From the NCBI RefSeq assembly GCF_002113885.1, contig NW_018408623.1, positions 369,333 to 433,332 on the forward strand: a DNA stretch of 64,000 nt, given 5' to 3'. A program made the translations under genes and the position numbers. Positions 36,036-64,000 of this stretch are shown in pieces (the stretch's first letter is position 1; every line of letters starts with the position of its first letter). This DNA is from Mizuhopecten yessoensis (Eukaryota). Below the pieces are notes generated by a model. It made no database searches. It was not told the origin of the DNA and saw nothing but the letters and a program-made list of their open reading frames with translations.

Positions 36036-39000
36036 GTAAGAAGCATATACCATTTTGTAATGTTTAATGCGTTGCAGTCTTGGTAATATTATGCTTGAGT
36101 TAGGATAGGATTTACTCATATAAACTGTCATAACGTTAAAGTCCTAACTAGTTTCGATATACATGTGTAAACTACTATACATGTAGTATCTTGCAAATTC
36201 AGGTGCAATATCAATATAGAAGTATGAATAAATATGGTTTCTTTTTCTTTTTCTAAAAATTATAGATACATCAAAGTCATGGGTTGGCATGAATAACGTT
36301 ATAAATTACTGAAGTATATGTGTGTATTGCGCCAGAATACATATCTAGTCATGCGTGAAGTATGTTTAGTCAATGTTAAACCCTACTCAAGGTAGACTAT
36401 CTATATACAATCAGCAACATTACAATGAAGCGCATTAGCTTTATTTACATTAAGATTAAGTAACAGTATGCAAAAATGAATAACTCTGCATCAAACAGCT
36501 GTTTCCTCCTTCAACGATTCCTCTTTAGTCAATGCTCAGGTCAAAAAGTTTGAAATCCAAATAGGTCTTAACTACTGTTGAAACGGAGGGGAGCTTCAAT
36601 TCCTTTTAATTAATGTATTCAAAAATTAAGAACAATACTAGTCAATTTCAAAATTAACAGTACCATTAAGGAGAGCTGACTCTGATTTGATATCAACATT
36701 ACCAGGGGGAAGTGTCAGATCTATTTACATATCAACATTATCATGGGGGAGTGACATATCTATTTAGATATCAACACCATTATAAGGGGGTGACATATCT
36801 ATTTATATATCAACATAACCATTAGGGGGTGACATATCTATTTAGATATCAACATAACCATTAGGGAGTGACATATCTATTTAGATATCAACATAACCAT
36901 TAGGGGGTGACATATCTATTTAGATATCAACATAACCATTAGGGGGGGACATATCTATTTAGATATCAACATTATCATAGGGGAGTGACATATCTATTTA
37001 GATATCAACACCAGCACGAGGGAGTGACATATCTATTCAGATATCAACATAACCATTAGGGAGTGACATATCTATTAAGATATCAACATAACCATTAGGG
37101 GGTGACATATCTATTTAGATATCAACATTATCATAGGGGAGTGACATATCTATTTAGATATCAACACCAGCACGAGGGAGTGACATATATCTATTCAGAT
37201 ATCAACATTATCATGGGGGAGCGACATATCTATTTAGATATCAACATCACCATGAGGGAGTGTCATATCTATTTAGATATCAACATTACTATGAGGGAGT
37301 GTCAGATCTATGAAGATATCAATATTACCATGAGGGAGTGTCATATCTATTTAGATATCAATATTACCATGAGGGATTGACAGATCTATTTTGATATCAA
37401 CATCACCTTGAGGGAGTGTCAGCTATATCTAGATATCAACTTTACAACAGGGGATTGATAGACTTATTTAGATATCAACGTTATTATGGTAGAATATCAG
37501 ATTTGTTAAGATATCAACATTACCATAAGGGGGTGACATATCTATTTAGATATCAACATAACCATTAGGGAGTGACATATCTATTTAGATATCAACATAA
37601 CCATTAGGAAGTGACAAATCTATTTAGATATCATTATTACTATGAGAGTGTGTCAGATCTATTAAGATATCGACGTTTTCATGCGAGAGTGTCAGATCTA
37701 TGTATATACCAATACAACCATGAGGGAATGTCAAATGTATTACAATATAAACATTACCATGAGAGTGTGTCTGATCTATTTAGATAACAACATTATCATT
37801 GGGGAGTGACATATCTATTTAGATATCAACATAACCATTGGGGAGTGACATATCTTTTTAGATATCGACGTTACCATTAGGGAGTGACATATCTATTTAG
37901 ATATCAACATAACCATTAGGGAGTGACATATCTATTTAGTTATTAACATAACCATTAGGGGGTGACATATCTATTTAGATATCAACATAACTATTAGGGG
38001 GTGACATATCTATTTAGATATACACATAACCATTAGGGAGTGACATATCTATTTAGATATCAACATATCCACGGGGGAGTGTCATATCTATTTAGATATC
38101 AACATCACCATCAGGGAGTGTCATATCTATTAATATATCAACATTATCATTGGGGATTGTCAGATTTGTTTAGATATCAATATTACCATGAGGGAGTGTC
38201 ATATCTATTTAGATATCAACATTACTATGAGGGAGAGTCAGATCTATTAAGATATCAACATTATCATGGATGAGTGTCAGATCTGTTTAGATATCAATAT
38301 TACCATGAGGGATTGACAGATCTATTTTGATATCAACATCACCATGAGGAAGTGTTAGCTATATCTAGATATCAACTTTACAACAGGGGAGTGATAGACT
38401 TATTTAGATATCAACGTTATTATGGTGGAATATCATATTTGTTTAGATATCAACATTACCATAAGGGATTGACAGATCTATTTAGATATCAACATCACCA
38501 TGAAGGAGTGTCAGCTATATCTAGATATCAACTTTAAAACAGGGGAGTGATAGATTTATTTAGATATCAACATTACAATGATTAAATGTCATATCTATTT
38601 TGATATCAACATTGCCATGCGTGAATGTCATATCTATTTAGATATCAACGTTACCATTTGGGAGTGACAGATCTATTTTGATATCAACAATACCGCGGGG
38701 GAGTGTCAGAGCTATTTAGATATCAACAAAACCACGAGGGAGTGATGGATCTATTTAGATATCAACATTTCCATGAGGGGGTATCAGATATATTTAGTTT
38801 TAATATTTCCAAGAGAGAGAGAGAGAGTTAAATCTATTAAGATAACAATATAACCATGAGTGAGTGTCAGATCTATTAAGATATCAATGTTTCATTGAGG
38901 AGTGTTAAATCTATTGAGATATCAACATTACCATGAGAGAGAGAGTTTGGTGTATTTAGATGTCAACATTACCATAGGGAGTGTCATATCTATTGAGATA

Positions 39001-42000
39001 TCAACGTTTCCTTGAGGGAGAGTAATATATCTATCTAGATATCAACATTATCTTGATGGATTTCAACATTACCATAGGGAGTGTCATATCTATTGAGATA
39101 TCAACGTTTCCTTGAGGGAGAGTAATATATCTATCTAGATATCAACATTATCTTGATGGATTTCAACATTACCATAGGGAGTGTCATATCTATTGAGATA
39201 TCAACGTTTCCTTGAGGGAGAGTAATATATCTATCTAGATATCAACATTATCTTGATGGATTTCAACATTACCATAGGGAGTGTCATATCTATTGAGATA
39301 TCAACGTTTCCTTGAGGGAGAGTAATATATCTATCTAGATATCAACATTATCTTGATGGATTTCAACATTACCATAGGGAGTGTCATATCTATTGAGATA
39401 TCAACGTTTCCTTGAGGGAGAGTAATATATCTATCTAGATATCAACATTATCTTGATGGATTTCAACATTACCATAGGGAGTGTCATATCTATTGAGATA
39501 TCAACGTTTCCTTGAGGGAGAGTAATATATCTATCTAGATATCAACATTATCTTGATGGATTTCAACATTACCATAGGGAGTGTCATATCTATTGAGATA
39601 TCAACGTTTCCTTGAGGGAGAGTAATATATCTATCTAGATATCAACATTATATTGATGGATTTCAATATTACCATGGCGGACTGTTAGCATTATTTACAT
39701 ATCAATATTTCAACGAAGGACTGTTAGCTTTAATTAGATATAAATATTACAACGAGGGACAGTTAGTCTTATCTAAATTTCAACATACCCATGTTATTTG
39801 ATCAACTCAAATGTATATACTTTATTCAAATCAAGCAAGTATACGTGGCACTATTCCAACAAACCATTGCATACGTCAATTAAGTCAGGGTAACATTGCC
39901 ATTGTGATCCTGTATGTCGACTTTGAAGATCATTTAGTCAATTTAGAACATCTTCTCCTCAAAATAGTTTCTTTTATCAGTACTTTTGGCTCTTCCACGA
40001 TATACACTCCCTCATACCAAACTACCGGAACGCTTTCGTTCTCTTGTTACGGGAGGTTTCCCCCAATAAAGGTAAACGTCATTATCAATATACAGATGTA
40101 AACAATTTTGTAGCATATTTTGCGAGAAGACAAACGAATACCAAAATGAAATCATTCCAGGATAAAAATGTTAAAAAGGTAAACAACATCTTGGTTGAGT
40201 TTGATGGTAAGATTTCCCAGCACACTGTACACTAAACTGTGCCCTTATATTTTTACTGATTTGTTTTTGTTTTCATATGAGGCTGAATTTACTGTCAAAC
40301 TTTATTGTCTTTTCTATTTCATTCGCTTTTCTCGATCTTTTGACAGAACAAGCAAGGTCGGTTTACTAATGCGGTGTACGATAAGTGGGGGAATTTAATT
40401 TTCCGTTCGTTAACGTTTCCTTTCTTGATAGTACCCTCCATGGTTCCCGAACCTACGGTGTTTAAATGTTGCAGTGTATACGCCATTCACGAGCTTCATC
40501 TAAATATCATGATTTACGTGATATATGTTGACTGCTGGCAGACAAATATACAAGGCGGGATTTCCCAGTATGCAGGTTGATTAAATAATTTAATGGTCAC
40601 CATCACAATTTCATTTGGAAATGTGCTATATCGGTATGTGTCTTTGTTTGATATGGTCGATGGTTTTGAAAATGCGCATAAGTCTATCATGCTATTTTGT
40701 TGTCACTTCTAGCTATAAGGACGTGACATTAGTTGGATTTGACCTCGATTTGTATGACGGGTGACGTCGATGAAGCAGACGATACCGAGTCTTCTCCTTG
40801 TACTTTTTTAAGGGTCACCAAGCAACAGTTTTTTTCTATAGTCTGCCATAGTTTTGTCGATTTCGAGTACATTGTAAAGAACTCTTGTCTAAATTTAATT
40901 TGTTAATGCAGAAAACAAAACTAAGTTTATAATATCTACTGCACTATATAACCATTTCGGTCATGTCTTAAGCATGTATTTGCAATGTGATACCATTCAT
41001 AAATGTCACTGCCGAAATAGAAATGCGTTTAAGGTGATCTACAAATATGTATTCATCACGAAGTAAAACCAAGACACGTCCTTTAACTTCAGAAAATTGT
41101 TTTTTTGCAAGAAGGCATACATCATATTTGGGATAAGATATATGTAATTCTGATGTGGTTATAAAACCTAGTATATAAGTACTTACGATAATAAGCATAC
41201 CTAAGAGTCTTATCTGCTAAATGGTAGAAATCCTTATAGTTTCATGAAGAAATAAAGGAGTCGTTACATCTTAGTGTTTTGTTCGAAATTAGGTACTGCA
41301 TTAATACACTTGTATTTAAAATATCCACAACAAATGGAGAGCGCTATACCAAAAATATTTGTTGGGCTTTTAACATAACACATTCTAAACTGGAATATAT
41401 AACCACATTTAACCGTATAAAATGTAATACTTAAACAGAATCAGTTCGGTGTTAAGCCTTTTTTGAGCATAGCTTGTGACACTTTATCGGCATTTATGTC
41501 TAGATCTTTTTACGATCCTTTAGGCTATTTAGTTTGAACCCCACGCGATTGTGCAAAACAATCAGTTATATGTATCCAAATGTATTTTTCAATCACTAAA
41601 CAATTCACCATTCATAGACAATCTCTCTCACAGAGGCAGGTCAACTACAAAGCGTATCCTCATCTTTATTGAAGTATTCGGCTTTATTTCAGCTTATAAT
41701 ACATTGAATTTAAAATGGCATGTTTCTATATCGATGCGACATCGAGACCGAGAGAACAAGGGGCGAAAATTACATACGAAACAGAATGCTTTGTACGATT
41801 TTCTAACTGAAATCTGATGTCGTGTAGTAGGGCTAAAGTAGAACACCTATATAACACCGGAAATACCGACAAACGGATAACTCGCATGCTGTTGCAGATA
41901 TTTAAACTAAGCATACGCAATACTAGGCATGCTTATGCTGGATAAATAGGAGTATGTGTGTATATGTTATCGAGGTGTAGTTAACTGTTTAATTGTATCT

Positions 42001-45000
42001 ATTTGCACGTTATCAGTATAACCTTATATTCTAGTTGAATCGATATTAAAAGAATTGTTTATTTTGTGTAGGGGGAGGGGAATGGAAGGGAACCAACTAT
42101 CAATTTTATGAAACCTGGTCGATAAAACGTTGGCAAAATACGAAAAGGAAAGAACGACATGGATACCATTGTCTTTGTCAAGGGACAGGTTAAATGTTCT
42201 AAGAAAATTCCCTAAAATGTTAATATGGATGGACTTCCTGTTTGGCGCTTTTGAAATCTAACCAATACCAATCGGAATGTATGCATGCAAGCAATCGTAT
42301 AAGAGACCGGTTTGCCAATTTATGTAAATATGCAGTCATATTTGAAGAATTAGTGAATAAATCAATCTGTCAAAGTCTGACTGTTTGTAATGTTATTAAC
42401 GTTACTTGGTGCGTGGTCATAATCCTGCAATGCTTAGAATGTATTCTGGAAGAATAAATATATCATATATATACATTTTTAAACGTAAGAATTCTAAACT
42501 CTTGCATTCGCAGTTGACAGTTGTTTATCTAACGTAAATTGTAAAGGTTATCAGTAGCAATGATTAATGTAAATAACAAAAACAAATGGTGAGTTGTCAT
42601 TAAGGTTGATAACACACTTAAGGATCCGACTCTTCTCCTGAAAACTGTAACCACCCACAAGGAACTGTTTTTCTGACATGACCATAGCGTTGGTAAATCA
42701 TTTCTGAAAAGAAAGTAACGCTTCATGGGATTTGAGAAATATGTTTCAGTTTTATGAAAAATGAAAATCAGGGGTTGGGGTTTCTGTATATACGTTAAAT
42801 CACAGAGCAATAGGATATAACCCTTAAAAGGTTCTCCCTCATATGACGTTACAGACCAGATGATATTTTTTTGTATGACTTCCAGCACGATCTCTTGTCT
42901 GGGGAACTTTCAAATACACAAAGAACTTAATATTTTACGAAAAGTCTAAAATGTTCCAATTCCAATAAAATACGAAATGATTTAGTTCACGTCTGTCCCC
43001 AAAACGTTTGTAAAGGCTAGTTAAATGATTGAAATAAGGCATATTTGTCCCCGCTCAAGGCTATATCGCTGAAGAGCCTTCACCGATATAATTATTTGGT
43101 AGTCATGTGTTTTATTGACTTTTCCTTCTTGAACAATGTTGTTATGTTTTAAAGAATGATAGAAAAGGATGTTTTACGCATATTTAATCGAGGGGCCTAC
43201 CCTAACGAATTGTTGTAGATGAAAAAGTTATGTTAAGACGCCACTTTTAAACAACAATATAACGTGTATCGAAACAGTAATTCACAAACCTTAATACAAA
43301 CAAATGTCTTGCAAGCAAAAAGAATCACTTTGTAATTTATGAAATTGACGTAAGCAACGCTTATTTTGAAATTCATTTAGTACATTACGGTTGTTTATAA
43401 ATAATGTCACAAGTAATGGACTACGTCATCATATCATTGCCACCACTGATGTTGCCTCAGAAAGAGACCTGGGCTCGAATTCAAACAAAGTTAAGATTAG
43501 ATATTTGTTTATGCTATGATACAACACTAACAAATATTCAAATTTAAAGCATCAAATAACTTTGATTACATGTAACTACAGTATTCAAATAGTAAACCAT
43601 AACGTCTTGCAGCTACTCGGGTAGACGGTTTAATGTAACAGCCCCCTACAATTACAACTGCAATTAGTCACTCGTTGTACATCTGATAAATACATTATTA
43701 GCGCTGTGGACCTTTATGGACGTTGTTTATTAATGTTGATTGCAAAACAAACGAAATAGAAAATAATGTTTGAATAATTATTTTCGTTTAACATATATCA
43801 AAAAAATGTATAGTTGGGCATTTTCGCAGGAGATTTATTTTTGCTATTTCGCAGTCACAAACGAACTAGTGCAGATCGGGAAAAACCACGAAATTAAACA
43901 AATATACAGTAACAGAAGTGATAAGTATCCATGAATACTACTGACACCATTCTGTTATTTTTCAAAACTGCTGCGCTGGACATCCATATTTAAACATAAG
44001 AAAAGTACATAGCTTTATACATCTTCCTCAATTATTATTTTTCAACTAAAAGAATATTCATACCTACTCAGAACATCTTAAAACATAATGATTTAATCCC
44101 CGATTTGACTAAGATTGAAACTGGCTACGAACTTATCATATTTCGACCGAATTTTGGTAAGTAGCTTATTGTGATACTGTGGAATATATTTGAAGGAAAT
44201 CTTTTATAATCATTATACATTAACCCCCTTCTCTCGTCATACTAAAGACGAGAAATGCTTTGTTAATGAATAAGAGACATAGGCATATATGTTTTGATTG
44301 AGGTATGTCGTTGATATGACTTGAGGACAATATCTTTAGATATAAGATAAAACCAAAATCACGTCAACAAGTGTGAGAAGACATAGTTTTGTACCTAAGC
44401 CTTCGTGTGTAAGTATAGTGGGCTCGAACAAACTAGTAGTCTGTGTGACCACAGGTGTATGATATCAATTGCGGTATTACGGCTATGTACGAAATAATTA
44501 TCTACGAATATCGCCTGCTCACCATAAACTACACCTGTTACTTCATAACCAATCTTACATTCAACGGCAAATTTAATCTTCATATTCATACTATAAACTA
44601 ACATCCAGTTTACCAACAAATATCAAAAGCATTTTGCAGGAGAAACATATGTTTTAGCGTATTCTTACTGAATACTATTATTGATAGAATGGGCGTCATG
44701 GATGGTTATCAAATTAAACTGTCCATTGGGCATGAATGTATCACAACAGTCTATCACATTCACTTTGTATCTAAACGAACCACAGCTAGTGCTAGTAGTA
44801 TCAAAAGGTGCACACGTAGTAATTGTATGTTATATTTTTCTTTACAGAATTTTTGTGATTGGTTTCTGGATGTGTCTGTTAACATTTACTGTTCATAGTG
44901 ACTCAAGGCACTTCAGTAAGTATATTTTATATGAAACAGTCGCTTAATTACAAATAATGTTGTTTAATTGTACATGTCATTGGTTTCGTGGTCCATCGCA

Positions 45001-48000
45001 ATTTTTAATACTTATGAATCAATATCAATGATGTTAGCAATCACAAAGCAGTTACTATGCCCTATTTAATGTCGTTATCATACTGTGTATCAGTTATCGC
45101 CAAAAGGTAACGTAAACAATTAACCGTCCATCACTTCAACATATCGGTTACCTTGATTCAATTACCTTACAGCGTTTACATTCCAACTCTTTATTTTTGT
45201 GAATTCCTTAAAATGCGATATAAGAATTCCAACGATTTTCTTGCGAGGATTCAATACGTAAAATGAACAGTATCATATATCCCTTGCTAAAATATTCTCA
45301 CACCATAATATATTTCCTGAAATTAAAGCGATTTACGATATATCTTTTTATCATGTTAAAATGAAATCAGGATAATTTCAGCATTTATTAAATTGATATA
45401 CATTAATGCAATACTAATCTATGGCAGTATCACTTTTATTGACATTAGTTTGCAAAATGTCTTTCATTTTTTCTTTCAAAAGTCACTCCTTTTTACATAA
45501 GATTCCATTTAAATTCCTTAAAATTATGACAACCTATATATTTTTTTTGCGGCAGAAAATTTACATTACTTCAAAGCAATATAACTACAAAATTTGAGGA
45601 AATTCTACTGAGAAATGGGGACACAATCCTATTACCTTAAATAGGCGAGGTCCGTTTATAAAATACATATTTTTAGTATAGAACATCACATTGAATAACA
45701 GTGGTATATTCTTTCATGTCTGAAATGTACACCAGAATCGATTCATTGATATGAAGTTTTTTTTGCTATTATGTAGTTAAGTATTGCTAAATTAAGACGA
45801 TTATTTCATGAGAGATACATTATGTATTATAGTAGTTCGAGTAAACGACATTTCCCCCCTTACATTTGAATTGTTGGCGTGTCATTGTCCAATGAATAGA
45901 GATTCTTGTTTCATTGGTATCGATTTCATATCTTCATAATGCATAATTTAAGTAATATAGTGGTCATATATAGGCTTAGGAAAATATAGTTGATAATAAT
46001 ATCATCTAAATCAAGAAACGTTGATACCTTAAATCATTTTATTGTTATTTTGCCAGATGGGATAACGTTGGAACCTATTATCATTTATTATCATTTTGAC
46101 AGATGGATAGATTTATACCTGTTATCATTTTGTGCTATTTTAACAGATTGGATAGATTTGATACCTATTATCATTTATTATTACTTTGACAGATGGGATA
46201 GAGTTGATATCTGTTATCATTTTGATTTGCTTTGACAGATAGGGAAACGTTGATACCTTTTATCAGTTTCTTATATTTTTACAGATAGGATAACGTTAAT
46301 ACCTGTTAGTATTTTATATTATTTTGCTGGTTTGAATAGCGTTGGAACCAGTTATCATTTTATATTATGTTGACAGCCGGATACTTTTGATACCTATAAA
46401 CATTTTATATCATTGTAACAGATGGGATAACGTTGATACAGTTTTGCAGCTGTTGGAATGCCAGTATTACCCGGACTGGGAACGATTTATATGTAGATAT
46501 AACCTTCGTTAAAAAATGCTGGGAATCACCATTGAAAAAATATGGAGGTTTTCAAATCATCCCTTACAAAAGTACCATGTTATTCAAGATTAGCGTTAAA
46601 GAATCCCTACAGAAGATGTTAAAGGTGAAAGAGTTAAAGTGCCAACTAAATGTAAGTCATACACGTATTTCTCTTCGGCAATTCGTCGTATTTTGTAGAA
46701 GCGTATTTGAAAACATTATCTATTTGCGATCTTCGTATTACTATGTAAATATTCATCGCAATAGAGTAGAATCCGAGAGCTGAGTACGTGACAAATCCTC
46801 GTGATTTAATTGTGACGTTATACGATACGTCATTGATATCAAATATAGGACTACTGTCACTGCATTAACATGCTTATCACTTGCAAGTGTAATACAGAAA
46901 AAAATGTATTATACTAACCTTTGTCACTAAAACAATGGGTAGTACTTATTGAGATATATTCAATTCCTTTTCCATAATTTCTAAATAGCTGTTTCTATTT
47001 GTATTCATATTTTTACAGAAAGGCTGTTTTACTACTATTTCTATGGTGAGAGACACAAGTTTGGAAGTAAGTAATAGATGTTCTAGAGAAGAATATTGAT
47101 AAATGGTGTTTTGTTTATAATGTGAAAATGTGGATTTTCAAGAACTGTCTGTAGCGTTTCAAAGTTTAAATTTCTATATCATTTATAGTTTAAATGCCCA
47201 TCTTATTGTTACAATTGTGAAAAAAGGGAAAACTTTTACTTTTTAATTGTGCCAAATTTAAGGATTCCTGTCCGACTAGTTTTTTTTTATATACACAGTA
47301 ACATCCCCTTAATTCCGTATTGGATATAACTATAGCACAGTTGGGGTGGCACACATCCGTTGACCAGGAACTCAGTGGATTGCAGCGATCGCCTAACATT
47401 GTGAAGTCCAAGGTTCGAATCCTGGTCCAGTCCTGCTGTATATTTACAATCACTATTGATTCAACGTTTTACCGTTCTCTCTTTTGTTTCATGACTTCGC
47501 GCAATCTAAGGTTTCCTTTTCAGAAGTTTTCTTATAAGTCTTCATTTCCATTACTTATATTTGTGTAGTCATTATAGCAGTATATGCATTTATGCTAAAC
47601 AGAACGCAAATAAAATTTGACACTGGTTTTTTTCTCTGAATTTACAGATTATTCCCTTTTGTAACTCTTGTGATAGTTGTATGGGAAAAGAAACAGGTTG
47701 GTATACAATACAATACGTCTGAATTTTAATTAGAAATTATTGAGAAGAATTTATTTACCAACATATACGTTTCAAACTTGAAAGATAAATCCTTATATAT
47801 CAATCAGCGATATGTTACTATTCAACATGCTTTCAAAAATTCTACAATAATGGCTAGCAATCCCTACCAATGCATATCGTTCTAACACTCACTTAGTGAA
47901 AGGAACGACAATTCTGATTAGTGAATGAATGGCCATAACAATGATTTGGTCACGTGAATACCCAATTAGCGATAATATACAGAATTTCAATACATTATAC

Positions 48001-49866
48001 AATTAAAGTTAATTGAAGTACTACATAAATTACTAGAGTGTATGAAAACGATTATTCCAACATTTTACTCCTTAAGAAAATATTCCCACTTGTCATCTCG
48101 ACAATCTGCAGTGACAACATTGTTTTTCAGATTATATCAGCTACACACATCAGAAGAGGAGCCGTGTTCCGGAAGTTGTCACTACTAAACCAAAGAACCC
48201 GCTCGCCCCAGAATCCTACAAATCACGATTTCTGGTCATGGCTGGTGTTGTCACAATTGTTGCTACCATAGCTACATTTGTTATCATCATGTTGGTATGC
48301 CGAATAAACAAAAACAGGATCCAGCGAAGAGGTAATATATTATTTCTCAACACTTGATTACCTTAATAATTATGTTAGAAACATACAGATGATATGAAAA
48401 ACAAAATATATTGTGATTATGATGACATCTGTGTTTTGCTATGTGTTCAATTAGACTGTTGTTTATTTCGTTAAATGTAACAAAATTATAATCAGATCAT
48501 ATGAAAAACAAATATTGTGATCGTGATGACATCGTCGCTATGCGTACAATGAGACATTTTGTAATTTCGTGTGAAGTGTAACAAAGAATATATACAACAA
48601 ATGCAGTTTTTAATGAAAATTAAAACAAAATTAATGGACTTTGAGAAATTATCATGTCCATCTGTAGTTGTAAATAGTGACGCATTAACTGCTTCAATAT
48701 CAATTTACAAATTGATCATTTTCAGGACCTGAACAACAATCGTTAGTGGATGTAGGGAGTGATACCACAGATGCACAAACAGGTAATACGGTTTTAATAT
48801 GCTTATGTAAGGATTGCATAGGACTTTTCCTTTGTTTATATTTTTGCTTAATTTTCATCGATTTAGAATTCGAATTACGTATTTGTAATAAATAAAAACA
48901 CAACTAAACTGAAACAGAAAAAATAGTCACCTACATTAGTTCTTAAACTTTCTACTAACTAAATGTAAACAAAAACAACAACAAAACCATAATCCGAGCT
49001 TCATCTCGATCAAATACAAGGATTTTCACGTCCTGACATCGAGAACACTGGTAGTGACAACATAACCACAAAGCACACAAGCACACAAGTGATAACAAAC
49101 ATTTTATAAGCACCAATGGTTTAAGATTCACTTTCTTATTGAGATAAAGTTCGATGCACAAATGTGTTTCATTTTTTTTATAGATGTTTCCATACCTATC
49201 GAACCAAACAGTCCTACAGAACAACCCAACACACGAATTCGAAGGCAGTCCGTGAAAATTGGTGTTTTCCACCCTCATATTCCGAAGGAGTTATCTTCTC
49301 AAGCGACCGAAAACCCTTTGGACGCACATGTGCAACGTATGATAAATATCCTTACTTCTGTACAAGAATTAGACGTTAATTATTTAACAACGAATTTAAC
49401 CAATCTATTTGAAGGGATTGATGAAGTGAGCTCTTCGCCAAAGATAATTCTTGTTCTTTGCGATAGGTTTAGTGAACTCTGCCACGAAGGAAGTGCTCAG
49501 AACGGGAATATTACCGAAGAGAAATGGACAGATACTGAAAGTAATCTTTTGAAAAGAATAAGAGAAAAATATTACCTAAATAATACTTGTTTGTATTTTG
49601 TAAATTTCAAACATTTTAAACAACAGAACAACGCCCTTGCTGATGCTCGAGTTATGTTTACTAGCCAGTCGTATAAGGTGTTCAGTATTGACTATTTGGG
49701 TCAAAGTGACGACCACTTCAAACAGCTTTTGGATTCAATTTTGTCTGATGTCATCTGTGACTCTGAAGCACGGAGCATACGAATCATGTCGCTTTTAAGT
49801 CAAGATTTGAACACAATTCATGTCAGTGATGCAATTGAACAGAGATTTATGTCGTTGTGCGAGTAG
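36022..49866 (+). CDS. IL-17-receptor-like type I membrane protein with SEFIR/TIR-like tail, copy A, spliced model 449 aa
   Basis: join(36022-36035,44848-44915,46422-46651,47019-47066,47648-47696,48131-48331,48726-48782,49184-49866) = 1350 nt, GT-AG, phases 2,1,0,0,1,1,1. Signal peptide MASGRIFVIGFWMCLLTFTVHS; ectodomain ending LEIIPFCNSCDSC; TM FLVMAGVVTIVATIATFVIIMLVC followed by RINKNR; cytoplasmic beta/alpha pattern. Family call is motif-based inference. Confidence 0.75.
36655..39795. repeat. ~39-bp minisatellite, copy A, in receptor intron 1
   Basis: Unit ~gatatcaacataaccattagggagtgacatatctattta; explains ORFs 37102-38537. Confidence 0.95.
38963..39670. repeat. 100-bp higher-order repeat, 7 near-identical copies
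   Basis: tcaacattaccatagggagtg recurs every 100 bp from 38963 to 39563. Confidence 0.95.
39960..40870 (+). mobile_element. decayed Penelope-like reverse transcriptase relic (copy A)
   Basis: Fragments CP.IFTDLFLFSYEAEF, FLDL, YDK...FPFL, YGV match the CAPLLADLFLYSYE / KLYDKRDDFNFPIVNFPFL type; many stops and frameshifts. Confidence 0.75.
44848..44915 (+). CDS. receptor A exon 2 (signal peptide IFVIGFWMCLLTFTVHS-DSRHF)
   Basis: tttacag|A ... TTC A|gtaagt; 68 nt; conserved in copy B. Confidence 0.85.
46016..46440. repeat. ~44-bp minisatellite built from the exon 3 acceptor and exon start (copy A, ~10 units)
   Basis: ttttgacag|atgggataacgttgatacc repeated; the last unit is the modelled acceptor. 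Confidence 0.9.
46422..46651 (+). CDS. receptor A exon 3 (GITLIQFCSCWNAS...KCQLN)
   Basis: taacag|AT ... AAT|gtaagt; 230 nt. Confidence 0.85.
47019..47066 (+). CDS. receptor A exon 4 (KGCFTTISMVRDTSLE)
   Basis: ttttacag|AAA ... GAA|gtaagt; 48 nt, phase 0-0. Confidence 0.8.
47362..47432 (+). mobile_element. tRNA-derived SINE head relic (copy A)
   Basis: A-box-like gaactcagtgg and B-box ggttcgaatcc; no intact cloverleaf. Confidence 0.6.
47648..47696 (+). CDS. receptor A exon 5 (IIPFCNSCDSCMGKET)
   Basis: tttacag|ATT ... ACA G|gttggt; 49 nt, phase 0-1. Confidence 0.8.
48131..48331 (+). CDS. receptor A exon 6 (stalk and TM helix)
   Basis: ttttcag|AT ... AGA G|gtaata; 201 nt; 24-residue hydrophobic helix then basic residues; different frame from the listed ORF. 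Confidence 0.87.
48726..48782 (+). CDS. receptor A exon 7 (GPEQQSLVDVGSDTTDAQT)
   Basis: ttttcag|GA ... ACA G|gtaata; 57 nt, phase 1-1. Confidence 0.7.
49184..49866 (+). CDS. receptor A exon 8, SEFIR/TIR-like cytoplasmic domain
   Basis: tttatag|AT; longest ORF in the window; VKIGVFH / HVQRMINIL / LDVNYL / KIILVLCDRF / LYFVNF / YKVF / FKQLLDSI. Confidence 0.85.
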
Positions 49867-51560: not shown

Positions 51561-51574
51561 ATGGCATCGGGAAG
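51561..51574 (+). CDS. receptor B exon 1 (MASG-R)
   Basis: ATG GCA TCG GGA AG|gtaata. Confidence 0.65.
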
Positions 51575-51974
51575 GTAATAAGCATGTACCATTTTGTGAT
51601 AATTTATGTATTGCAGTATTGATATTAATGTGCTTGCGTTAAGATTTAATTTACTCATATAATGTCATAATATTAGGGTCCTAACTAGTTTCTATATAAA
51701 GGTGTAAATTGCATGACGTACTTTACCATATCAATATAGATGGATGAATTATCAGATTTTTCTTAAAACTGAAAATATATCAAAGTCATGGGTTGGCATG
51801 AATAACGTTATCAATTATTGAAGCATATATGTGTATTGCGCAACAATACAAATCTAGTCATGCATGAAGTATGTTTAGTCAATGTTAAACCCTATTCAAG
51901 GTAAACTATCAATATACAATATACAATGAGCAACATGACAATGAAGTGCATTTGCTATATATACATATCAGCAT

Positions 51975-54900
51975 GTCTAAGAGGGAGCGTTATCTCTATT
52001 AAGATACCAATATTACAACGATAAAATGTTAGCGCTATTTAGATTCAAACATTACCACGAGGGAGTGTTTGCTCTATTTATATACTAGCATGACATGAGG
52101 ACACGATACCTCTATTTAGATATATGAACGTAACGTACAAAGTTGTGATAGAACCTTTAAAATTTAGTTATAGAAAAAGTATGCCAATATCACATATCAA
52201 CATAACCATTAAGGACTGTAAGCTCTATTCACATATCAACATAACCATTAAGGACAGTAAACTCTATCCACATATCAACATAACCATTAAGGACTGTAAG
52301 CTCTATTCACATATCAACATAACCATGAGGGACCGTTAGCTTTATTTATGTATCAACATAACCATGAGAGACCGTTAGCTTTATTTACATATCAACATAA
52401 CCATGAGGGACTGTTAGATATATTTACATATCAACATAACCATGAGGGACCGTTAGCTTAATTTGTATATCATCATAACCATTGAGGACCGTAAGCTCTA
52501 TTTACATATCAACATAACCATGAGGGACCGTTAGCTTTATTTATGTATCAACATAACCATGAGAGACCGTTAGCTTTATTTACATATCAACATAACCATG
52601 AGGGACTGTTAGATATATTTACATATTAACATAACCATGAGGGACCGTTAGCTTTATTTATATATCGACATAACCATGTGGGACCGTTAGCTTTAGCTAT
52701 ATATCAACAGAACCACGAGGGACCGTAAGCTTTATTTAGATATCGACATAACCATGAAGGATCGTTAGCTTTATTTACATATCAACATAACCATGAGGGA
52801 CTGTTAACCTTATTTACATATCAACATAACCATGAGGGACCGTTAGCTTTATTTATGTATCAACATAACCATGAGGGACCGTTAGCCCTATTTACATATC
52901 AACATAACCATGAGGGACTGTTAGATATATTTACATATCAACATAACCATGAGGGACCGTTAGCTCAATTTGTATATCATCATAACCAGTGAGGACCGTG
53001 AGCTCAATTTATATATCAACACAACCGTGAGGGACCGTTAACTTTTTTTATATACCAACATAACCATGAGGGACCATTAGCTTTATTTATACATCAACAT
53101 AACCATGAGGGACCATTAGCTTTATTAATATATCAACATAACAATGAGGGACCGTTAACTTTATTTATCTATCAACATAACCATGAGGGACCGTTAACTT
53201 TATTTATATCAACATAACCATGAGGGACTGTTAACCTTATTTACATATCAACATAACCATGAGGGACCGTTAACTTTATTTATATATCACCATAACCACG
53301 AGGGACTGTTAGCTTTATTTATATATCAACATAACCATGAGGGACCGTTAACTTTATTAACATATCAACATAACCATGAGGGACCGTTAACTTTATTTAT
53401 ATATCAACATAACCATGAGGGACCGTTAGCTCTATTTATATATCAACATAGCCATGAGGGACCGTTAGCTCTATTTATATATCAACATAACCATGAGGGA
53501 CCGTTAGCTCAATTTGTATATCATCATAACCATTGAGGACCGTAAGCTCTATTTATATATCAACACAACCGTGAGGGACCGTTAACTTTTTTTATATATC
53601 AACATAACCATGAGGTACCGTTAACTTTATTTATATATCAGCATAAACATGAGGGACCGTTAACTTTATTTATATATCAACATAACCATGAGGGACCGTT
53701 AGCTCTATTTATATATCAACATAGCCATGAGGGACCGTTAGCTCTATTTATATATCAACATAACCATGTGGGACCATTAACTTTATTTATATATCAACAT
53801 AACCATGAGGGACCGTTAACTTTATTTATATATCAACATAACCATGAGGGACCGTTAACTTTATTTATATATCAACATAACCATGAGGGACCGTTAACTT
53901 TATTTATATATCAACATAACCATGAGGGACCGTTAACTTTATTTATATATCAACATAACCATGAGGGACCGTTAACTTTATTTATATATCAACATAACCA
54001 TGAGGGACCGTTAACTTTATTTATATATCAACATAACCATGAGGGACCGTTAACTTTATTTATATATCAACATAACCATGAGGGACCGTTAACTTTATTT
54101 ATATATCAACATAACCATGAGGGACCGTTAACTTTATTTATATATCAACATAACCATGAGGGACCGTTAACTTTATTTATATATCAACATAACCATGAGG
54201 GACTGTTTACTTTATTTATATATCAACATAACCATGTGTGACCATTAACTTTATTTATATATCAACATAACCATGAGGGACTGTTAGCTCTATTTATATA
54301 TCAACATAGCCATGAGGGACCATTAGCTTTATTTATATATCAACATAACCATGTGGGACCATTAACTTTATTTATATATCAACATAACCATGAGGGACCG
54401 TTAACTTTATTCATATATCAACATAACCATGAGGGACTGTTAGCTCTATTTATATATCAACATAACCATGAGGAACCGTTAACTTTATTTATATATCAAC
54501 ATACCCATGAGGGACTGTTTACTTTATTTATATATCAACATAACCATGAGGGACTGTTAGCTCTATTTATATATCAACATAACCATGAGGAACCGTTAAC
54601 TTTATTTATATATCAACATAACCATGAGGGACCGTTAACTCTATTTATATATCAACATAACCATGAGGGACCGTTAACTTTATTTATATATCAACATAAC
54701 CATAGGGGCCGTTAACTTTATTTATATATCAACATAACCATGTGGGACCATTAACTCTATTTATATATCAACATAACCATGAGGGACCGTTAACTTTATT
54801 TATATATCAACATAACCATGAGGGACCGTTAGCTCTATTTATATATCAACATAACCATGAGGGACCATTAGCTTTATTAATATATCAACATAACCATGAG

Positions 54901-55318
54901 GGACTGTTTACTTTATTTATCTATCAACATAACCATGAGGGCCGTTAACTTTATTTATATATCAACATAACCACGAGGGACCTTTTACTTTATTTATCTT
55001 TCAACATAACCATGAGGGACCATTAGCTTTATTTATACATCAACATAACCATGAGGGACCGTTAACTTTATTTACATATCATCTTAACCATGAAGGACCT
55101 TTCACTTTATTTACATATCAACAATATCATGACGGAGAGTAAACTTTATTTATATATTAACATTACTATGAGGGATTATTATGATATCAACATTATCATG
55201 TAGAAGAGGGAGAGTTATTTACATATCAACAATACCGTGACGGACTGTAAGCTCTATTTACATATCAGAGCTACCATGAGGGACTGTTAGCCTTATTCTA
55301 ATTTCAACATAACCATGA
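51975..55318. repeat. 39-bp minisatellite, copy B
   Basis: Unit tatcaacataaccatgagggaccgttaactttatttata; explains the YQHNHEGPLTLFI ORFs. Confidence 0.96.
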
Positions 55319-55449
55319 TGCTTGATCGACTCAATTGTATATATTTTATTCAAATTAAGCAAGTATGCCTGGTACAACTCTAATAAAGCATTGTCTACGT
55401 CAATTAAGTCAGGGTAGCATTTACATTGTGTCCCTCAATTTTTTGTTTT

Positions 55450-56110
55450 TCTTTTATCAGTACTTTTGGCTTTTTCCCTATATACACTCCCTCATACCAC
55501 ACTACAGGAACGCCTTCGTTCTCTTGTTACGGGAGGTTTTCCACCAATAAAGGTGAACGTCATTATAAATAAACAATTTTTGTAGGAGATCTTGTGAGAA
55601 GAACAAGGAATATCAGAATGAATTAATTCCAGGAGAAATATTTTACAATGGTTAACAATATATCTTGGCTGAGTTTGATGGTAAGATTTCCACTGTACAC
55701 ATTCATAAACTGTGCCCTTATTCTTGCTGATTTGTTTTTTGTTTTCCTATGAGGCTATCGAACTATATTGTCTCTTCTACTTCAGGCGCTTATTGTGATT
55801 TTCAATTTCTTGACAAGCAGAAACAGCCTACTATTAAGCTGTACGATAAGCGGGGTGATGGTAATTTTCCTTTCGTGAACGTTTCCTTTCTTGATAGTAA
55901 CATCCATGATTCCCGAACCTACGGTGTTTAAATGTTGCAGTGTATACGCCATTCACAAGCTTCATCTAAATATCATGATTTACGTGATATATGTTGACTG
56001 CTGGCGGACAAATATACAAGGCGGGATTTACAAATATGCACGTTGATGATACTATACATAATTGCATGGTCACCATCACGATCTCATTGGGATTTATGAT
56101 ATATCTTTGT
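55450..56110 (+). mobile_element. decayed Penelope-like RT relic (copy B)
   Basis: NCALILADLF, KLYDKRGDGNFPFVNVSFLDSNI, YGV. Confidence 0.75.
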
Positions 56111-57829
56111 GTGTCTTAACCTCCTAAGTTTCAGAAAAAAATGTTTTTGCGAGAAGGCATACACCATATTTAGGATAAAAATAAACGTAATGCTGATGTT
56201 GTATAAAACCTAGTATATAACTACTGATGATTATTTTGATACTAATAGAGTCTTATCTGTTAAATGGTAGAAATACTTTTTCATGAAATATGAAGGAGTG
56301 TTTTGTGCGATGTTATAAACTGGATTAATACACAAATTAACAATTTGTTCTTCCCCAATTTGGGAGCACTGTACTGAAAATATCTGTTGGACTTGTAGCA
56401 TAACACATGCTAAACTGAAATGTTTAACCAAATCTTACCGTACAAAATGTAATGCTTAACAAAGAAACAGTTAGCTGTTAAGCCTTTTTTAAACATAGCC
56501 TGAGACACTCGTTTTACGATCCTTTACGCTATTTAATGGAAACCTCACGCGATTGTGCAAAATAATCAGTTATTAGTATCCAAATTATGTTTAAATCACG
56601 AAACAATTAACCATTTATAGACAACCTCTATCACAGAGGCAGACCAACTACAAAGCATATCAATGTCTTATCTTTATAGGTTGATCACATGTCAGCCTAT
56701 AAAATAATGAATTCAAAATGGCATGTTTCTTTATCGATGCGGAAATCGAGACAGAGAAACATGAGACCAACATTTACATACGAAGCAGAATGCTTTGTTC
56801 AATTTTCAGAGAAATTCATAATTAATAAGAGATTTCTAACTTAGACCTTGTGTCGTTCAGTAGGGCTAAAGTAGGACGCCTACCTAACCCCGGAAAAACC
56901 AAAAAGGGATAAATCGCATGCTGTTGCAGATATTTGTTGGGCTTTACAATTGTATTAACACAGAGATGTCAGCAATTGACTTATTGGGATAAAATATGTA
57001 ATCTTTAAATATGGAAATTGATATTCCCACACGCCCTGCAGGTTAGTACAAATTTTATTCCGGTACACGTGTACTGAAACTCAACATACGCAAAACTAGG
57101 CATGCTTTGACTTGATACATAAGAGTACTTATTTATATGTTATCGTGGTGTAGTTAACTGTTAAATTATATTTATTTGCACGCAATCAGTGTAACCTTAT
57201 ATTGTAGACAAAATGCCAACCAAATTTGTCTTAAGAATCGTGTTGATAAAAGGGTGTTGCATTTATTATGTGTATATAAGTATATATCAGGCGATATTTA
57301 AAGTGCTTGTGTACCCAAAAAACAACACTGATGTTCTAGAGCAGAAATAACAATTGTATGAAGCATTTTAGCAACCATATGTAGAAACTTTTTAGCGAAT
57401 TTTGAGACGCCTTCAATAACATCAAGGGGACAATGAAATGAGCAACACCAATTTTACCAGTAAAACATGCGAAACATCCACTAATTTCATTAAGAGTATA
57501 TATAACATCATCGATTGGTACTATGCTTGAATTTATAAAAAAAATGCCTGGGAAGGGGAGGGCACCAATTATCACCCTTATGCCCAATTATCCATAAAAC
57601 TTGGGCAAAATATGATTAAGGAAAGATTAGCATGGACACCATGACCTTTACCAAGGGTTGCGTCGAATCTACAGGTAATTTGTTCCAAGCAAATTCCCTA
57701 AAATGTCATTTTGAACGGGTTTCTTCTTTTGCGCTTTTGAGAGCTGACCAATGCCATTGGAATGTATGCATATAAGCAATTGTACTCTAGAACGATATGC
57801 CAACTTTTATGTAAACTAGATTGGTGATT

Positions 57830-59971: not shown

Positions 59972-60039
59972 AATGTTAGTGATTGGTTTCTGGATGTGTC
60001 TGGTAACATTCACTGTTCATGGTGACACAAGGCACTTCA
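59972..60039 (+). CDS. receptor B exon 2 (MLVIGFWMCLVTFTVHG-DTRHF)
   Basis: tttacag|A ... A|gtaagt; 68 nt. Confidence 0.75.
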
Positions 60040-61156: not shown

Positions 61157-61858
61157 AAACATTGATACCTATACTCATTTTATTGTTATTTGGCCAGATG
61201 GGATAACGTTGAAACCTATAATCATTTATTATAATTTTGACAGATGGGAGCGTTGATACCTGTTATCATTTTGTGTTATTTTGACAGATTGGATAGAGTT
61301 GATACCTGTTATCATTTTGTATTATTTTGACAGATGGATAGAGTTTATACCTGTTATCATTGTATGCTATTTTGCAAGATGGGATAACGTTGAAACCTAC
61401 TATCATTTTATGCTATTTTGCCAGATGGGATAACGTTGAAACCTACTATCATTTTATGCTATTTTGCCAGATAGGATAGAGTTTATACCTGTTATCATTT
61501 TGTGTTATTTTGACAGGTGGGAAAGCGTTGATATCTTTTGTATCATATTATAGTATTTTGACAGATGAGATAGCGTTGATACCTATTATCATTTATTATT
61601 TTGTTGACAGATCAGATAGAGTTTATACCTGTTATCATTTTGTGTTATTTTGACAGATGGGAAAACGTTGAACCCTAATATCAGTTTCTTATATTTTTAC
61701 AAATAGGATAGCGTTGATACCTGTTAAAATGTTATATTATTTTGCTGGATGGAATAGCGTGGGAACCAGTTATCATTTTATATCATGTTGACAGTCGGAT
61801 AATGTTGATACCTATTATAATTTTATAACATTTTAACAGATAGGATAACGACGATACA
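61157..61858. repeat. ~44-bp acceptor-derived minisatellite (copy B, ~16 units)
   Basis: ttttgacag|atgggata(a/g)cgttgatacctgttatca repeated up to the modelled acceptor at 61839. Confidence 0.9.
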
Positions 61859-62069
61859 GTTTTGCAGCTGTTGGAATGCCAGTATTACCCGGACTGGGAA
61901 CGATTTATATGTAGATATATCCTTCTTTAAAAATTGCTGGGAATCACCATTGAAAAATCCTGGAGGTTTTCAAATCATCCCTTACGAAAGTACCATGTTA
62001 TTCAAGATTGGCGTTAAAGAATCCCTACGGAAGATGTTAAGGGTGAAAGAGTTAAAGTGCCAGCTAAAT
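61840..62069 (+). CDS. receptor B exon 3
   Basis: ttaacag|AT ... AAT|gtaagt; 230 nt, open. Confidence 0.75.
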
Positions 62070-62457: not shown

Positions 62458-62505
62458 AAAGGTTGTTTTACTATTATTTCTATGGTGAGCGACACAAGTT
62501 TGGAA
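62458..62505 (+). CDS. receptor B exon 4 (KGCFTIISMVSDTSLE)
   Basis: ttcacag|AAA ... GAA|gtaagt; 48 nt. Confidence 0.72.
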
Positions 62506-62543
62506 GTAAGTAATATGTGTTCTAGAGAAGAATATTGATAAAT

Positions 62544-63705: not shown

Positions 63706-63754
63706 ATTATTCCCCATTGTAAATCTTGTGATAGTTGATATGGAAAAGAAACAG
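63706..63754 (+). CDS. receptor B exon 5 with in-frame TGA (IIPHCKSCDS*YGKET)
   Basis: tttacag|ATT ... ACA G|gttggt; 49 nt as in copy A. Confidence 0.65.
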
Positions 63755-64000
63755 GTTGGTATACAATGCAATACGCCTAAATTGTAATTAGAAATTATTG
63801 AGAAGGAATTATTTACAAACATATACGTTTCAAAATGGAAAAATAATCCTTTTATACCAATCAGCGATATATTACTATTCAACATGCTTTCAAAAATTTT
63901 AAAATAATGGCTAGCAATTCGTTCCAAGATATATCGTCCTAACACTCACTTAGTGTAAGGAGCGACAACTCTGATTAGAGAATAGATGGCCATAACAATG

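What the first reader, a model, noticed from the sequence alone, without database searches (positions are those of the whole stretch)
63706..63754. In-frame TGA at the last ectodomain Cys of paralogue B: receptor/decoy pair?
Seen: A reads TGT GAT AGT TGT ATG GGA (C-D-S-C-M-G); B reads TGT GAT AGT TGA TAT GGA, with frame and exon length preserved. The stop falls at the end of the folded domain, one exon before the TM exon, giving a 130-aa signal-peptide protein. Inference, in order: recent pseudogenisation; a secreted decoy paired with the signalling receptor; or, least likely, readthrough or selenocysteine (CxxU), for which no SECIS can be assessed because B's 3' end is outside the window.
Basis: partly seen in the sequence, partly recalled or inferred. 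Interest (0 to 1): 0.7.

Follow-up and report, generated by a model that had tools for sequence, protein, structure and literature searches.

The report
Segregating stop codon in duplicated scallop receptor
The stop codon is real, but it appears to be one common allele of a young duplicate of a scallop-only immune-type receptor gene, with an intact allele in other animals, so it is an ordinary loss-of-function polymorphism and not a receptor/decoy pair or a selenoprotein.

Summary
The TGA is there (window 63736-63738), in a 49-nt exon of copy B of a tandemly duplicated, scallop-specific gene. The gene encodes a small single-pass receptor with an FN3-like ectodomain, a TM helix and a TIR/SEFIR-like tail.

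The TGA replaces a Cys that is kept in paralogue A and in the orthologues of three other scallop genera (C-x-x-C-[DE]-S-C-M-G). The change is a 4-nt cluster, TATG>ATAT, which equals +A/-G. Every other B exon, every splice site and the downstream TM and TIR-like exons are intact. No SECIS lies within 6 kb downstream.

Contigs of two independent DNA runs break exactly at the A of the TGA. A k=31 bookkeeping reproduces their ends only if one sample is heterozygous (TGA / A-like TGT ATG GG) and the other holds only the intact A-like allele.

So the stop is a genuine but segregating nonsense allele of a young, fast-evolving duplicate (omega 0.9-2.6 against A). It is not a fixed receptor/decoy pair, not selenocysteine and not an assembly error.

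The 130-aa product would lack the eighth Cys, and its mRNA is a predicted NMD target. RNA data (a few reads, none on this exon) cannot test that. This scan had already noted copy A on the same window.

The parts
63736..63738 (+). In-frame TGA of the reference B allele, codon 131 counted from the exon-0 ATG. It replaces the third Cys of the C-x-x-C-x-S-C motif.
63738..63741 (+). The 4-nt cluster that differs from A and from the inferred intact B allele (ATAT against TATG, equal to +A and -G). It gives Cys-Met > stop-Tyr.
63768..63768 (+). Intronic G (A has A) that appears linked to the TGA allele. It is the last variant position of the bubble in sample X8.
63706..63754 (+). B exon 4 (49 nt, phase 0 to phase 1), the membrane-proximal Cys-knot exon.
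62458..62505 (+). B exon 3 (48 nt), intact.
61840..62069 (+). B exon 2 (230 nt), the main part of the FN3-like ectodomain, intact.
59972..60039 (+). B exon 1 (68 nt), the signal peptide. It has its own ATG at 59973, as in Ylistrum.
51561..51574 (+). B exon 0 coding part (ATG GCA TCG GGA AG|gt), identical to A's.
47648..47696 (+). A exon 4, with the intact TGT ATG GGA.
36022..49866 (+). Paralogue A. Exons: 36022-36035, 44848-44915, 46422-46651, 47019-47066, 47648-47696, 48131-48331 (TM), 49184-49866 (TIR/SEFIR-like).
51931..56117 (.). 39-bp satellite array in intron 0 of B. A has the matching array from about 36612 into the 40 kb range, so the array was duplicated with the gene.

Best explanation
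Copy B is a lineage-specific tandem duplicate of a scallop-only single-pass receptor gene (signal peptide, FN3-like ectodomain closed by a C-x-x-C-x-S-C stalk, TM helix, TIR/SEFIR-like cytoplasmic domain). The reference genome carries a nonsense allele of B. A clustered 4-nt change (TATG>ATAT) turned the invariant third Cys of the stalk motif into TGA and the next Met into Tyr. The allele is still segregating: other animals carry a B allele that reads TGT ATG GG like copy A.

The nonsense allele is most likely a loss-of-function allele. Translation stops after 130 residues, before the TM helix and the signalling domain. The product would have seven Cys instead of eight. The stop lies 16 nt before one exon junction and 217 nt before the last one, which by the usual 50-55-nt rule makes the mRNA a target of nonsense-mediated decay.

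Shown: the sequence, its derived state, the intact rest of the gene, the absence of a SECIS, and fast protein evolution of the pair. Inferred: the polymorphism (from contig ends, not from letters read), and NMD and loss of function (from general knowledge).
For: 1. TGA at 63736-63738 in frame, with exon length and splice sites kept.
2. It is derived. Paralogue A and the orthologous 49-nt exons of Ylistrum balloti, Pecten maximus and Argopecten irradians all read C-x-x-C-[DE]-S-C-M-G with TGT or TGC at this codon. The Logan transcript P0004 keeps C-K-G-C-G-S-C.
3. It is the only disabling change. All seven B exons are open with canonical splice sites. A and B differ by 46 indels in 3.66 kb of intron but by only two in 1.27 kb of exon, both of 12 nt. 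Both copies were therefore kept as coding genes for most of their history.
4. The duplication is lineage-specific. The genome has only two copies. The three other scallops have one copy between the sulfate transporter and a distant paralogue, and this window has the same flanks.
5. Polymorphism. In DNA runs X8 and X14 (different studies) contigs stop at L009 2737, the G of TGA. They restart at 2769 in X8 and at 2746 in X14. Depth shows nothing laid over 2738-2745 in X14 and one extra stretch of about 90 nt in X8. With k=31, a heterozygote (reference / A-like at 2738-41 and 2768) predicts ends 2737 and 2769 and a 91-nt reference branch. A sample with only the A-like allele predicts 2753 (= 2737 + the 16 unaligned letters of X14's record) and 2746. 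The reference allele alone predicts no break.
6. No SECIS in 6 kb downstream at E<=10, nor in a narrower and laxer search of the 3' UTR.
7. Relaxed or diversifying evolution. Omega between A and B is 2.6 (ectodomain) and 0.9 (cytoplasmic), against 0.1-0.4 between species. All eight listed coding SNPs of B in X8 and X14 are nonsynonymous.
8. Trace RNA only. There are about 1-3 reads on B exon 5, intron 5 and exon 6 in 1.87 Gb of raw RNA-seq, none on exons 2-4, and no splice joints.
Against: The intact allele was not read letter by letter. It is inferred from contig boundaries and depth arithmetic. The read-laying output hides 45 difference rows and 261 loose ends, and it does not say on which side of X14's record the 16 unaligned letters lie. 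X8 and X14 could be pools rather than single animals. Expression of either allele, NMD and absence of a truncated protein are untested. A stop allele at what looks like intermediate frequency (reference, one of two in X8, none in X14) could also be kept by selection. The frame-preserving form of the change (+1/-1 within 6 nt) is odd for a plain null mutation, though a single clustered event explains it.
Confidence: 0.7

Rival explanations
1. Allelic soluble decoy. The TGA allele is expressed and makes a secreted 130-aa FN3-like ectodomain that competes with the full-length A and B receptors for ligand, and it is kept at intermediate frequency by selection.
For: The stop falls after the last predicted beta strand of the ectodomain, in the lower-confidence stalk. 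The signal peptide and the four ectodomain exons are intact. The allele is seen in the reference and fits X8, so it may be common. The ectodomain evolves fast (omega 2.6).
Against: It removes the eighth Cys of a motif invariant in five homologues and leaves an odd number of Cys. No RNA read covers exons 2-4. The stop is followed by two exon junctions, so NMD is predicted. The truncation is not shared by any other species or by copy A. The reference haplotype carries further unusual changes in the now untranslated exon 6: a 12-nt insertion in a conserved motif and F>S at a conserved hydrophobic site.
Confidence: 0.1
2. Fixed young pseudogene. The TGA is present in all B haplotypes, and the contig breaks in X8 and X14 have another cause.
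For: The alternative allele's letters were not seen directly. Contig holes 'prove nothing' according to the tool's own warning. Expression is near zero.
Against: The reference sequence shares no 31-mer with A near the exon, so no break is expected. Three boundary numbers (2737/2769; 2746; 16 extra letters) and two depth sums match the two-allele models exactly.
Confidence: 0.1
3. Cryptic-donor rescue. The mutation makes GAT A|GTTGAT, which resembles the exon's own donor CAG|GTTGGT. Splicing there would drop 21 nt, keep the frame and skip the stop.
For: This rests on sequence only. The shortened exon would be 28 nt, and both 28 and 49 leave remainder 1 on division by 3.
Against: The site has A at -1 and A at +5, both poor for a donor (general knowledge of the MAG|GTRAGT consensus). 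No splice joints were seen in RNA.
Confidence: 0.03
4. Assembly or sequencing error in the reference.
For: An +A/-G pair within 6 nt looks like a local alignment or consensus slip.
Against: X8, from another study, shows contig ends (2737/2769) and about 90 nt of extra laid depth. These fit a branch carrying the reference letters and do not fit a sample with the A-like allele only.
Confidence: 0.03
5. Recoding. The TGA is read as selenocysteine (C-x-x-U) or read through.
For: The TGA aligns with a conserved Cys, as in Cys/Sec pairs, and the frame is kept downstream.
Against: There is no SECIS at E<=10 in 6 kb downstream or in the 1.35-kb 3' region searched alone. The neighbouring Met changed in the same event. 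The codon is polymorphic with TGT. The next base is T, not the C of known leaky UGA contexts (general knowledge).
Confidence: 0.02

Closest known systems
Segregating nonsense alleles of young or redundant genes ('polymorphic pseudogenes'; human CASP12 and segregating olfactory-receptor pseudogenes, recalled from general knowledge)
   Same: There is a single derived premature stop in an otherwise intact gene. An intact allele exists in the same species. The gene belongs to a fast-evolving, partly redundant sensory or immune class.
   Different: The polymorphism is inferred here from contig ends in two samples and has not been genotyped. The mutation is a 4-nt cluster, not a point change.
Dispensable, lineage-specific immune-type genes in bivalves (presence-absence variation in Mytilus, PMC7653742)
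   Same: It is a young, taxon-restricted, tandemly duplicated gene of a bivalve that is functional in some individuals and not in others.
   Different: The gene is present in all three samples. Variation is a stop codon, not a deletion or hemizygosity.
Soluble decoy receptors made by truncation (IL-1R2 or soluble IL-17RA-type forms, recalled from general knowledge)
   Same: A signal peptide plus ectodomain without TM or signalling domain would result.
   Different: Known decoys are fixed genes or regulated splice forms with a complete disulfide set. This is an allele that loses an invariant Cys, and no expression is shown.
Cys/Sec pairs in C-x-x-U selenoproteins
   Same: A TGA aligns with a conserved Cys in a C-x-x-C context.
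   Different: There is no SECIS, the context is extracellular and structural, and the codon is polymorphic with TGT.
IL-17 receptor / STIR (SEFIR + TIR) superfamily
   Same: It is a single-pass receptor. The ectodomain model is FN3-like, with IL-17RA among the best TM-scores (0.46-0.47). The cytoplasmic model matches TIR (Z 10.6) and SEFIR (Z 8.7-9.3) domains.
   Different: There is no Pfam SEFIR or TIR match even at E<=1. Flavodoxin-like folds score nearly as well. There is one ectodomain instead of two or more.

Membership tests
Segregating loss-of-function (nonsense) allele | The premature stop is derived relative to paralogue and orthologues | tested here: met
   A and three other genera have TGT or TGC followed by ATG GG; only B has TGA TAT GG.
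Segregating loss-of-function (nonsense) allele | An intact allele exists in the same species | tested here: met
   This is indirect. The contig ends and depths of X8 and X14 match k=31 predictions for a heterozygote and for a carrier of only the A-like allele. The letters were not read.
Segregating loss-of-function (nonsense) allele | The rest of the gene is intact | tested here: met
   All exons are open, splice sites are canonical, and exon indels are only 12-nt ones.
Segregating loss-of-function (nonsense) allele | The transcript of the stop allele is reduced (NMD) or gives no functional protein | tested here: inconclusive
   Only about 1-3 RNA reads lie on B, none on exon 4, and the genotype of the RNA sample is unknown.
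Fixed (unitary) pseudogene | Several disabling mutations, fixed in the species | tested here: not met
   There is one stop only, and it appears polymorphic.
Soluble decoy receptor | Complete, independently folding ligand-binding domain | tested here: inconclusive
   The beta sandwich is complete in the model, but the eighth invariant Cys is lost. The spliced B ectodomain itself was not folded.
Soluble decoy receptor | The truncated form is expressed and secreted | tested here: inconclusive
   No reads lie on exons 2-4 in the RNA runs laid. Protein is not testable here.
Soluble decoy receptor | The truncated form is conserved or fixed | tested here: not met
   It is absent from A and from three other genera and is allelic within the species.
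Selenoprotein (UGA = Sec) | SECIS element in the 3' UTR | tested here: not met
   Rfam cmscan at E<=10 on L006 1-6000 and on 2050-3400 gave no SECIS family.
Selenoprotein (UGA = Sec) | TGA kept in the population or in orthologues | tested here: not met
   Orthologues have Cys codons, and an intact TGT allele is inferred.
IL-17 receptor family (SEFIR) | SEFIR domain recognisable by sequence (Pfam SEFIR model) | tested here: not met
   There is no SEFIR or TIR hit at E<=1 for A, B or three orthologues.
IL-17 receptor family (SEFIR) | STIR (TIR/SEFIR) fold of the cytoplasmic domain | tested here: inconclusive
   The model has pLDDT 69.5 and pTM 0.70. The top VIA hit is the IL-1RAcPb TIR domain (Z 10.6), SEFIR scores Z 8.7-9.3, and flavodoxin-like folds reach Z 9.4. 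Foldseek found nothing at E<=0.001.
IL-17 receptor family (SEFIR) | FN3-type ectodomain like IL-17RA D1 | tested here: inconclusive
   The A. irradians ectodomain model has pLDDT 75.6. Matches are FN3 and cytokine-receptor hits at E 0.01-0.05, with IL-17RA at TMq 0.46-0.47.

The most novel reading that the evidence does not exclude
The two B alleles form a balanced receptor / soluble-ectodomain polymorphism. The TGA allele would make a secreted 130-aa FN3-like protein that damps signalling through the full-length A and B receptors. Selection would keep both alleles, so that individuals differ in the set-point of an innate-immune pathway.
Probability: 0.07. Interest if true: 0.6.

Novelty: new member of a known kind. 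Interest (0 to 1): 0.25.

Why it matters
The importance is modest.
- It shows that the reference assembly carries a null allele of a gene that seems intact in other animals. B should therefore not be annotated as a dead pseudogene, a decoy or a selenoprotein from the reference alone.
- It is a clean small example of birth-and-death evolution in a scallop-restricted TIR/SEFIR-like receptor family: lineage-specific duplication, amino-acid changes in excess, and a segregating knockout.
- TGA homozygotes, if they exist, are natural knockouts for asking what copy B does.

Tried and rejected
- The repeat finder on the whole window returned only the 39-bp satellite. A BLAST of the window against itself was used instead.
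- My first exon-2 acceptor ('gcag|C') did not fit the phase of exon 1. The Ylistrum locus showed the true acceptor 28 nt upstream.
- I considered that copy A had lost its start codon, because it has ATT where B and Ylistrum have ATG. I rejected this after finding a shared upstream exon with an in-frame ATG in both copies.
- The search for homologous proteins gave one hit only. The exhaustive representative search gave four.
- RNA run X19, listed as a 'holder', covers only repeats (L009 1401-2000, 2201-2600, 5601-6000) and says nothing on B.
- Foldseek against the PDB gave no match at E<=0.001 for either model.
- A relative-rate test (B-derived 21 against A-derived 10 nucleotide changes) is not significant (p=0.07), and less so if the two clusters count as single events.
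- Omega > 1 in the ectodomain is not significantly above 1 by my own rough binomial estimate (2 synonymous of 23 changes, p about 0.15, not run in a tool). It is far above the between-species 0.1-0.4.
Exons were used one by one, and the natural A. irradians protein stood in for the ectodomain.
- For the k-mer bookkeeping only, a model allele (B with A's letters at five positions) was built inside a script and not printed.

Full report
**What is in the sequence.** The window is G000:C5296:369333-433332 of a 988-Mb, 82,659-contig genome.

At 63706-63754 there is a 49-nt exon between a 'ttacag' acceptor and a 'gttggt' donor. It reads ATT ATT CCC CAT TGT AAA TCT TGT GAT AGT TGA TAT GGA AAA GAA ACA G. 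Its paralogue at 47648-47696 reads ...TGT GAT AGT TGT ATG GGA... with the same length and the same splice sites. The difference at the stop is a block of four adjacent letters, TATG in A and ATAT in B. This can also be written as an inserted A plus a deleted G five bases on.

**The two genes.** A BLAST of the window against itself, extended with 20 kb fetched downstream (L006, L007), shows a tandem duplication of about 15-16 kb. Copy A runs from about 35.7 to 50.4 kb. Copy B runs from about 51.2 to 66.7 kb in continued window coordinates. The duplication includes a 39-bp satellite array in the first intron.

I read the exons from the sequence and checked them against the orthologous loci of other scallops:

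| Exon | Copy A | Copy B | Content |
|---|---|---|---|
| 0 | 36022-36035 | 51561-51574 | ATG GCA TCG GGA AG, identical in both |
| 1 | 44848-44915 | 59972-60039 | signal peptide |
| 2 | 46422-46651 | 61840-62069 | main ectodomain |
| 3 | 47019-47066 | 62458-62505 | ectodomain |
| 4 | 47648-47696 | 63706-63754 | C-x-x-C-x-S-C stalk |
| 5 | 48131-48331 | L006 229-429 | TM helix |
| 6 | 49184-49866 | L006 1423-2099 | cytoplasmic domain |

All phases fit. Every other B exon is open and every splice site is canonical. The genome holds only these two copies.

**What the gene is.**
- Pfam finds no domain in A, B or the orthologues, even at E<=1.
- An AlphaFold model of B's exon-6 product was built with five homologues in the alignment (pLDDT 69.5, pTM 0.70). 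It gives a three-layer alpha/beta fold.
- In an all-against-representatives search, its best match is the IL-1RAcPb TIR domain (Z 10.6, rmsd 3.1 over 135 residues). Plant TIR, TRIF, MyD88, IL-17RA/RB/ACT1, a prokaryotic SEFIR domain and IL-17RB SEFIR follow at Z 8.4-9.7. Flavodoxin-like proteins score almost as well. Foldseek alone found nothing significant.
- A model of the ectodomain of the natural A. irradians protein (pLDDT 75.6) is an FN3-like sandwich. It has weak matches to FN3 and cytokine-receptor domains, and IL-17RA is among the best TM-scores (0.46-0.47).
- Homologues were found only in Ylistrum balloti, Pecten maximus, Argopecten irradians and one Logan transcript of unknown species.

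**The stop is derived, and the Cys is invariant.** The orthologous 49-nt exon is present upstream of the annotated start in Y. balloti and P. maximus, and inside the A. irradians model. All of these read C-x-x-C-[DE]-S-C-M-G, with TGC or TGT followed by ATG GG at the codons in question. The transcript P0004 has C-K-G-C-G-S-C. Full-length family members have eight ectodomain Cys. The truncated B product would have seven.

In the three other genera there is a single copy between a sulfate-transporter gene and a distant paralogue of about 250 aa. The same two neighbours flank the A-B pair here. The duplication is therefore specific to this lineage.

**B is not an old pseudogene.**
- A global alignment of A and B shows 46 indel events in about 3.66 kb of aligned intron. 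The 1.27 kb of exon holds only two, both of 12 nt. At the intron rate about 16 would be expected, so frame-breaking changes have been removed from both copies for most of their history.
- Between species, omega is 0.1-0.4.
- Between A and B it is 2.6 in the ectodomain (21 nonsynonymous against 2 synonymous changes) and 0.9 in the cytoplasmic exon.
- Polarised with the outgroups, both copies carry derived replacements, B more than A (19 N + 2 S against 8 N + 2 S). The difference is not significant.
- This supports the sister note s1-519587 on an excess of amino-acid changes. It fits either relaxed constraint or diversifying selection after the duplication.
- One oddity stays open. Synonymous divergence between A and B (about 0.03) is well below intron divergence (0.07-0.23). 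This suggests exon-centred gene conversion.

**Is the TGA real, and is it fixed?** I had one call of read laying and used it on L009 (continued coordinates 61001-67000; L009 position + 61000 = window coordinate). I laid two DNA runs from different studies (X8, X14), one RNA contig run (X19) and one raw RNA-seq run (X24).

What one search shows at the exon:
- In both DNA runs a contig that matches B-specific sequence ends at L009 2737, the G of the TGA.
- The next contig starts at 2769 in X8 and at 2746 in X14.
- The depth of bin 2601-2800 in X14 (23.1) is exactly the sum of the two flanking contigs, so nothing was laid over 2738-2745.
- In X8 the bin (18.1) needs one more stretch of about 90 nt at depth about 14.3, which is also the extra depth seen at 2784.
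- X14's left record has 16 letters that do not align.

I then did the k=31 bookkeeping for three models:

| Model of the sample | Predicted contig ends | Observed |
|---|---|---|
| Reference B + A only | no 31-mer shared with A near the exon, so no break | breaks in both runs |
| Heterozygote: reference allele + allele A-like at 2738-2741 and 2768 | common contigs end at 2737 and restart at 2769; reference-only branch of 91 nt (2708-2798) | fits X8 |

Three boundary values and two depth sums fit without any free parameter. I conclude that the reference allele exists in an independent sample, so it is not an assembly error. I also conclude that a B allele reading TGT ATG GG, with A at 63768, segregates with it. 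X8 fits a heterozygote and X14 fits a sample lacking the TGA.

This is an inference from contig ends. The letters of the intact allele were not shown to me, many rows of the output are hidden, the side of the 16 letters is not stated, and the samples could be pools.

**Other features of the reference haplotype.** X8 and X14 both lack a 12-nt insertion (K-I-M-Y) that the reference B has inside the conserved F-T-S-Q-S-Y-K-V motif. Both have Phe where the reference has Ser at a conserved hydrophobic position. All eight coding differences listed for B in these samples are nonsynonymous, and three of them match A. The list is truncated, so this is only suggestive.

**RNA.**
- X19 covers only repeats.
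- In 1.87 Gb of X24 there is about one read on exon 5. It carries the B-population variant 3389A, so it comes from B and not from A.
- There is also a partial read in intron 5 and about one read on exon 6.
- There are no reads on exons 2-4 and no splice joints.
- B is at best barely transcribed in that sample. Nothing can be said about the TGA in RNA or about NMD.

**Recoding.** Rfam found no SECIS at E<=10 in the 6 kb after the window's end, nor in a separate and laxer search of the 1.35 kb after B's stop codon. Orthologues have Cys, the adjacent Met changed in the same event, the codon is polymorphic, and the base after the TGA is T. Selenocysteine or programmed readthrough is very unlikely.

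**Verdict.** The important correction is that the stop seems to be an allele, not a property of the gene.

The most likely mechanism is plain loss of function of one B haplotype. Translation ends before the TM helix and the TIR/SEFIR-like domain. An invariant Cys is lost. The mRNA has two exon junctions after the stop, the last one 217 nt downstream. By the usual rule for nonsense-mediated decay (general knowledge, not tested in molluscs here) it should therefore be degraded.

A secreted decoy made from this allele is not excluded, but nothing speaks for it beyond the position of the stop. A weak cryptic donor created by the mutation (GAT A|GTTGAT) could in principle skip the stop in frame. 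There is no evidence for its use.

This kind of event, a segregating nonsense allele in a young and partly redundant immune-type duplicate, is well known. It also fits the picture of dispensable lineage-specific genes in bivalves (PMC7653742). I score it as ordinary, with some local value for annotation and as a possible natural knockout.

All searches used single exons by reference or natural database proteins.

Noticed in passing
window 36612 to about 41000, and 51931-56117: Long arrays of a 39-bp satellite (more than 100 copies each) sit in intron 0 of both copies and were duplicated with the gene. The two arrays are about 70% alike, and B's array is 85-95% alike internally.
   Followed up: partly
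L006 8925-9137 (continued coordinates 72925-73137): A third, distant paralogue lies downstream of B. Its ectodomain exon has the same F-C-x-C-W ... C-W ... C pattern (26-29% identity to A and B). It is conserved in synteny in P. maximus and A. irradians, where the gene model is about 250 aa. It may be a short family member without the TIR-like domain.
   Followed up: partly
L010 6437-10016; L008 7674-10016: The NCBI models of P. maximus (XP_033744833.1) and Y. balloti (LOC132545222) start at the Met right after the invariant Cys (M-G-K-E/K-T). Yet intact signal-peptide and ectodomain exons lie upstream in frame. These models look truncated at the 5' end.
   Followed up: partly
L006 1880-1960 (continued coordinates about 65905-65916): The reference B allele has a 12-nt insertion (K-I-M-Y) in a motif conserved in all homologues. 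Both other DNA samples lack it. The reference also has Ser at a conserved Phe/Leu/Trp position where both samples have Phe.
   Followed up: partly
A and B exons against introns (window 44848-50166 and 59972-66400): Synonymous divergence between A and B (about 0.03) is several-fold below intron divergence (0.07-0.23). Exon 6 with its flanks is 93% identical. This may reflect exon-centred gene conversion between the copies.
   Followed up: partly
window 63238-63413: A tRNA-derived SINE-like element lies in intron 3 of B (and of A at about 47250-47430), with at least 40 copies of 74-78% identity across the genome.
   Followed up: no
window 62401-63000 (L009 1401-2000): A very highly repeated element is inserted in intron 3 of B and is absent from A. 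Its k-mer depth is 10^4-10^5 in DNA runs, and it is well covered on both strands in RNA-seq.
   Followed up: no
window 36004-36012 and 51543-51551: A three-codon upstream ORF (ATG TTG TGA) ends 10 nt before the exon-0 ATG in both copies.
   Followed up: no
window 24861-32243, with a 45-nt tandem repeat at about 29537-30043: The 3' exons of a sulfate-transporter (SLC26/STAS) gene lie here, syntenic with P. maximus and A. irradians. A 45-nt periodic repeat lies next to one of its exons.
   Followed up: no
L006 3440-3562: A near-perfect palindromic hairpin gives weak hits on both strands to several unrelated miRNA families (best 39.8 bits, below gathering). It is probably a MITE-like inverted repeat.
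   Followed up: no
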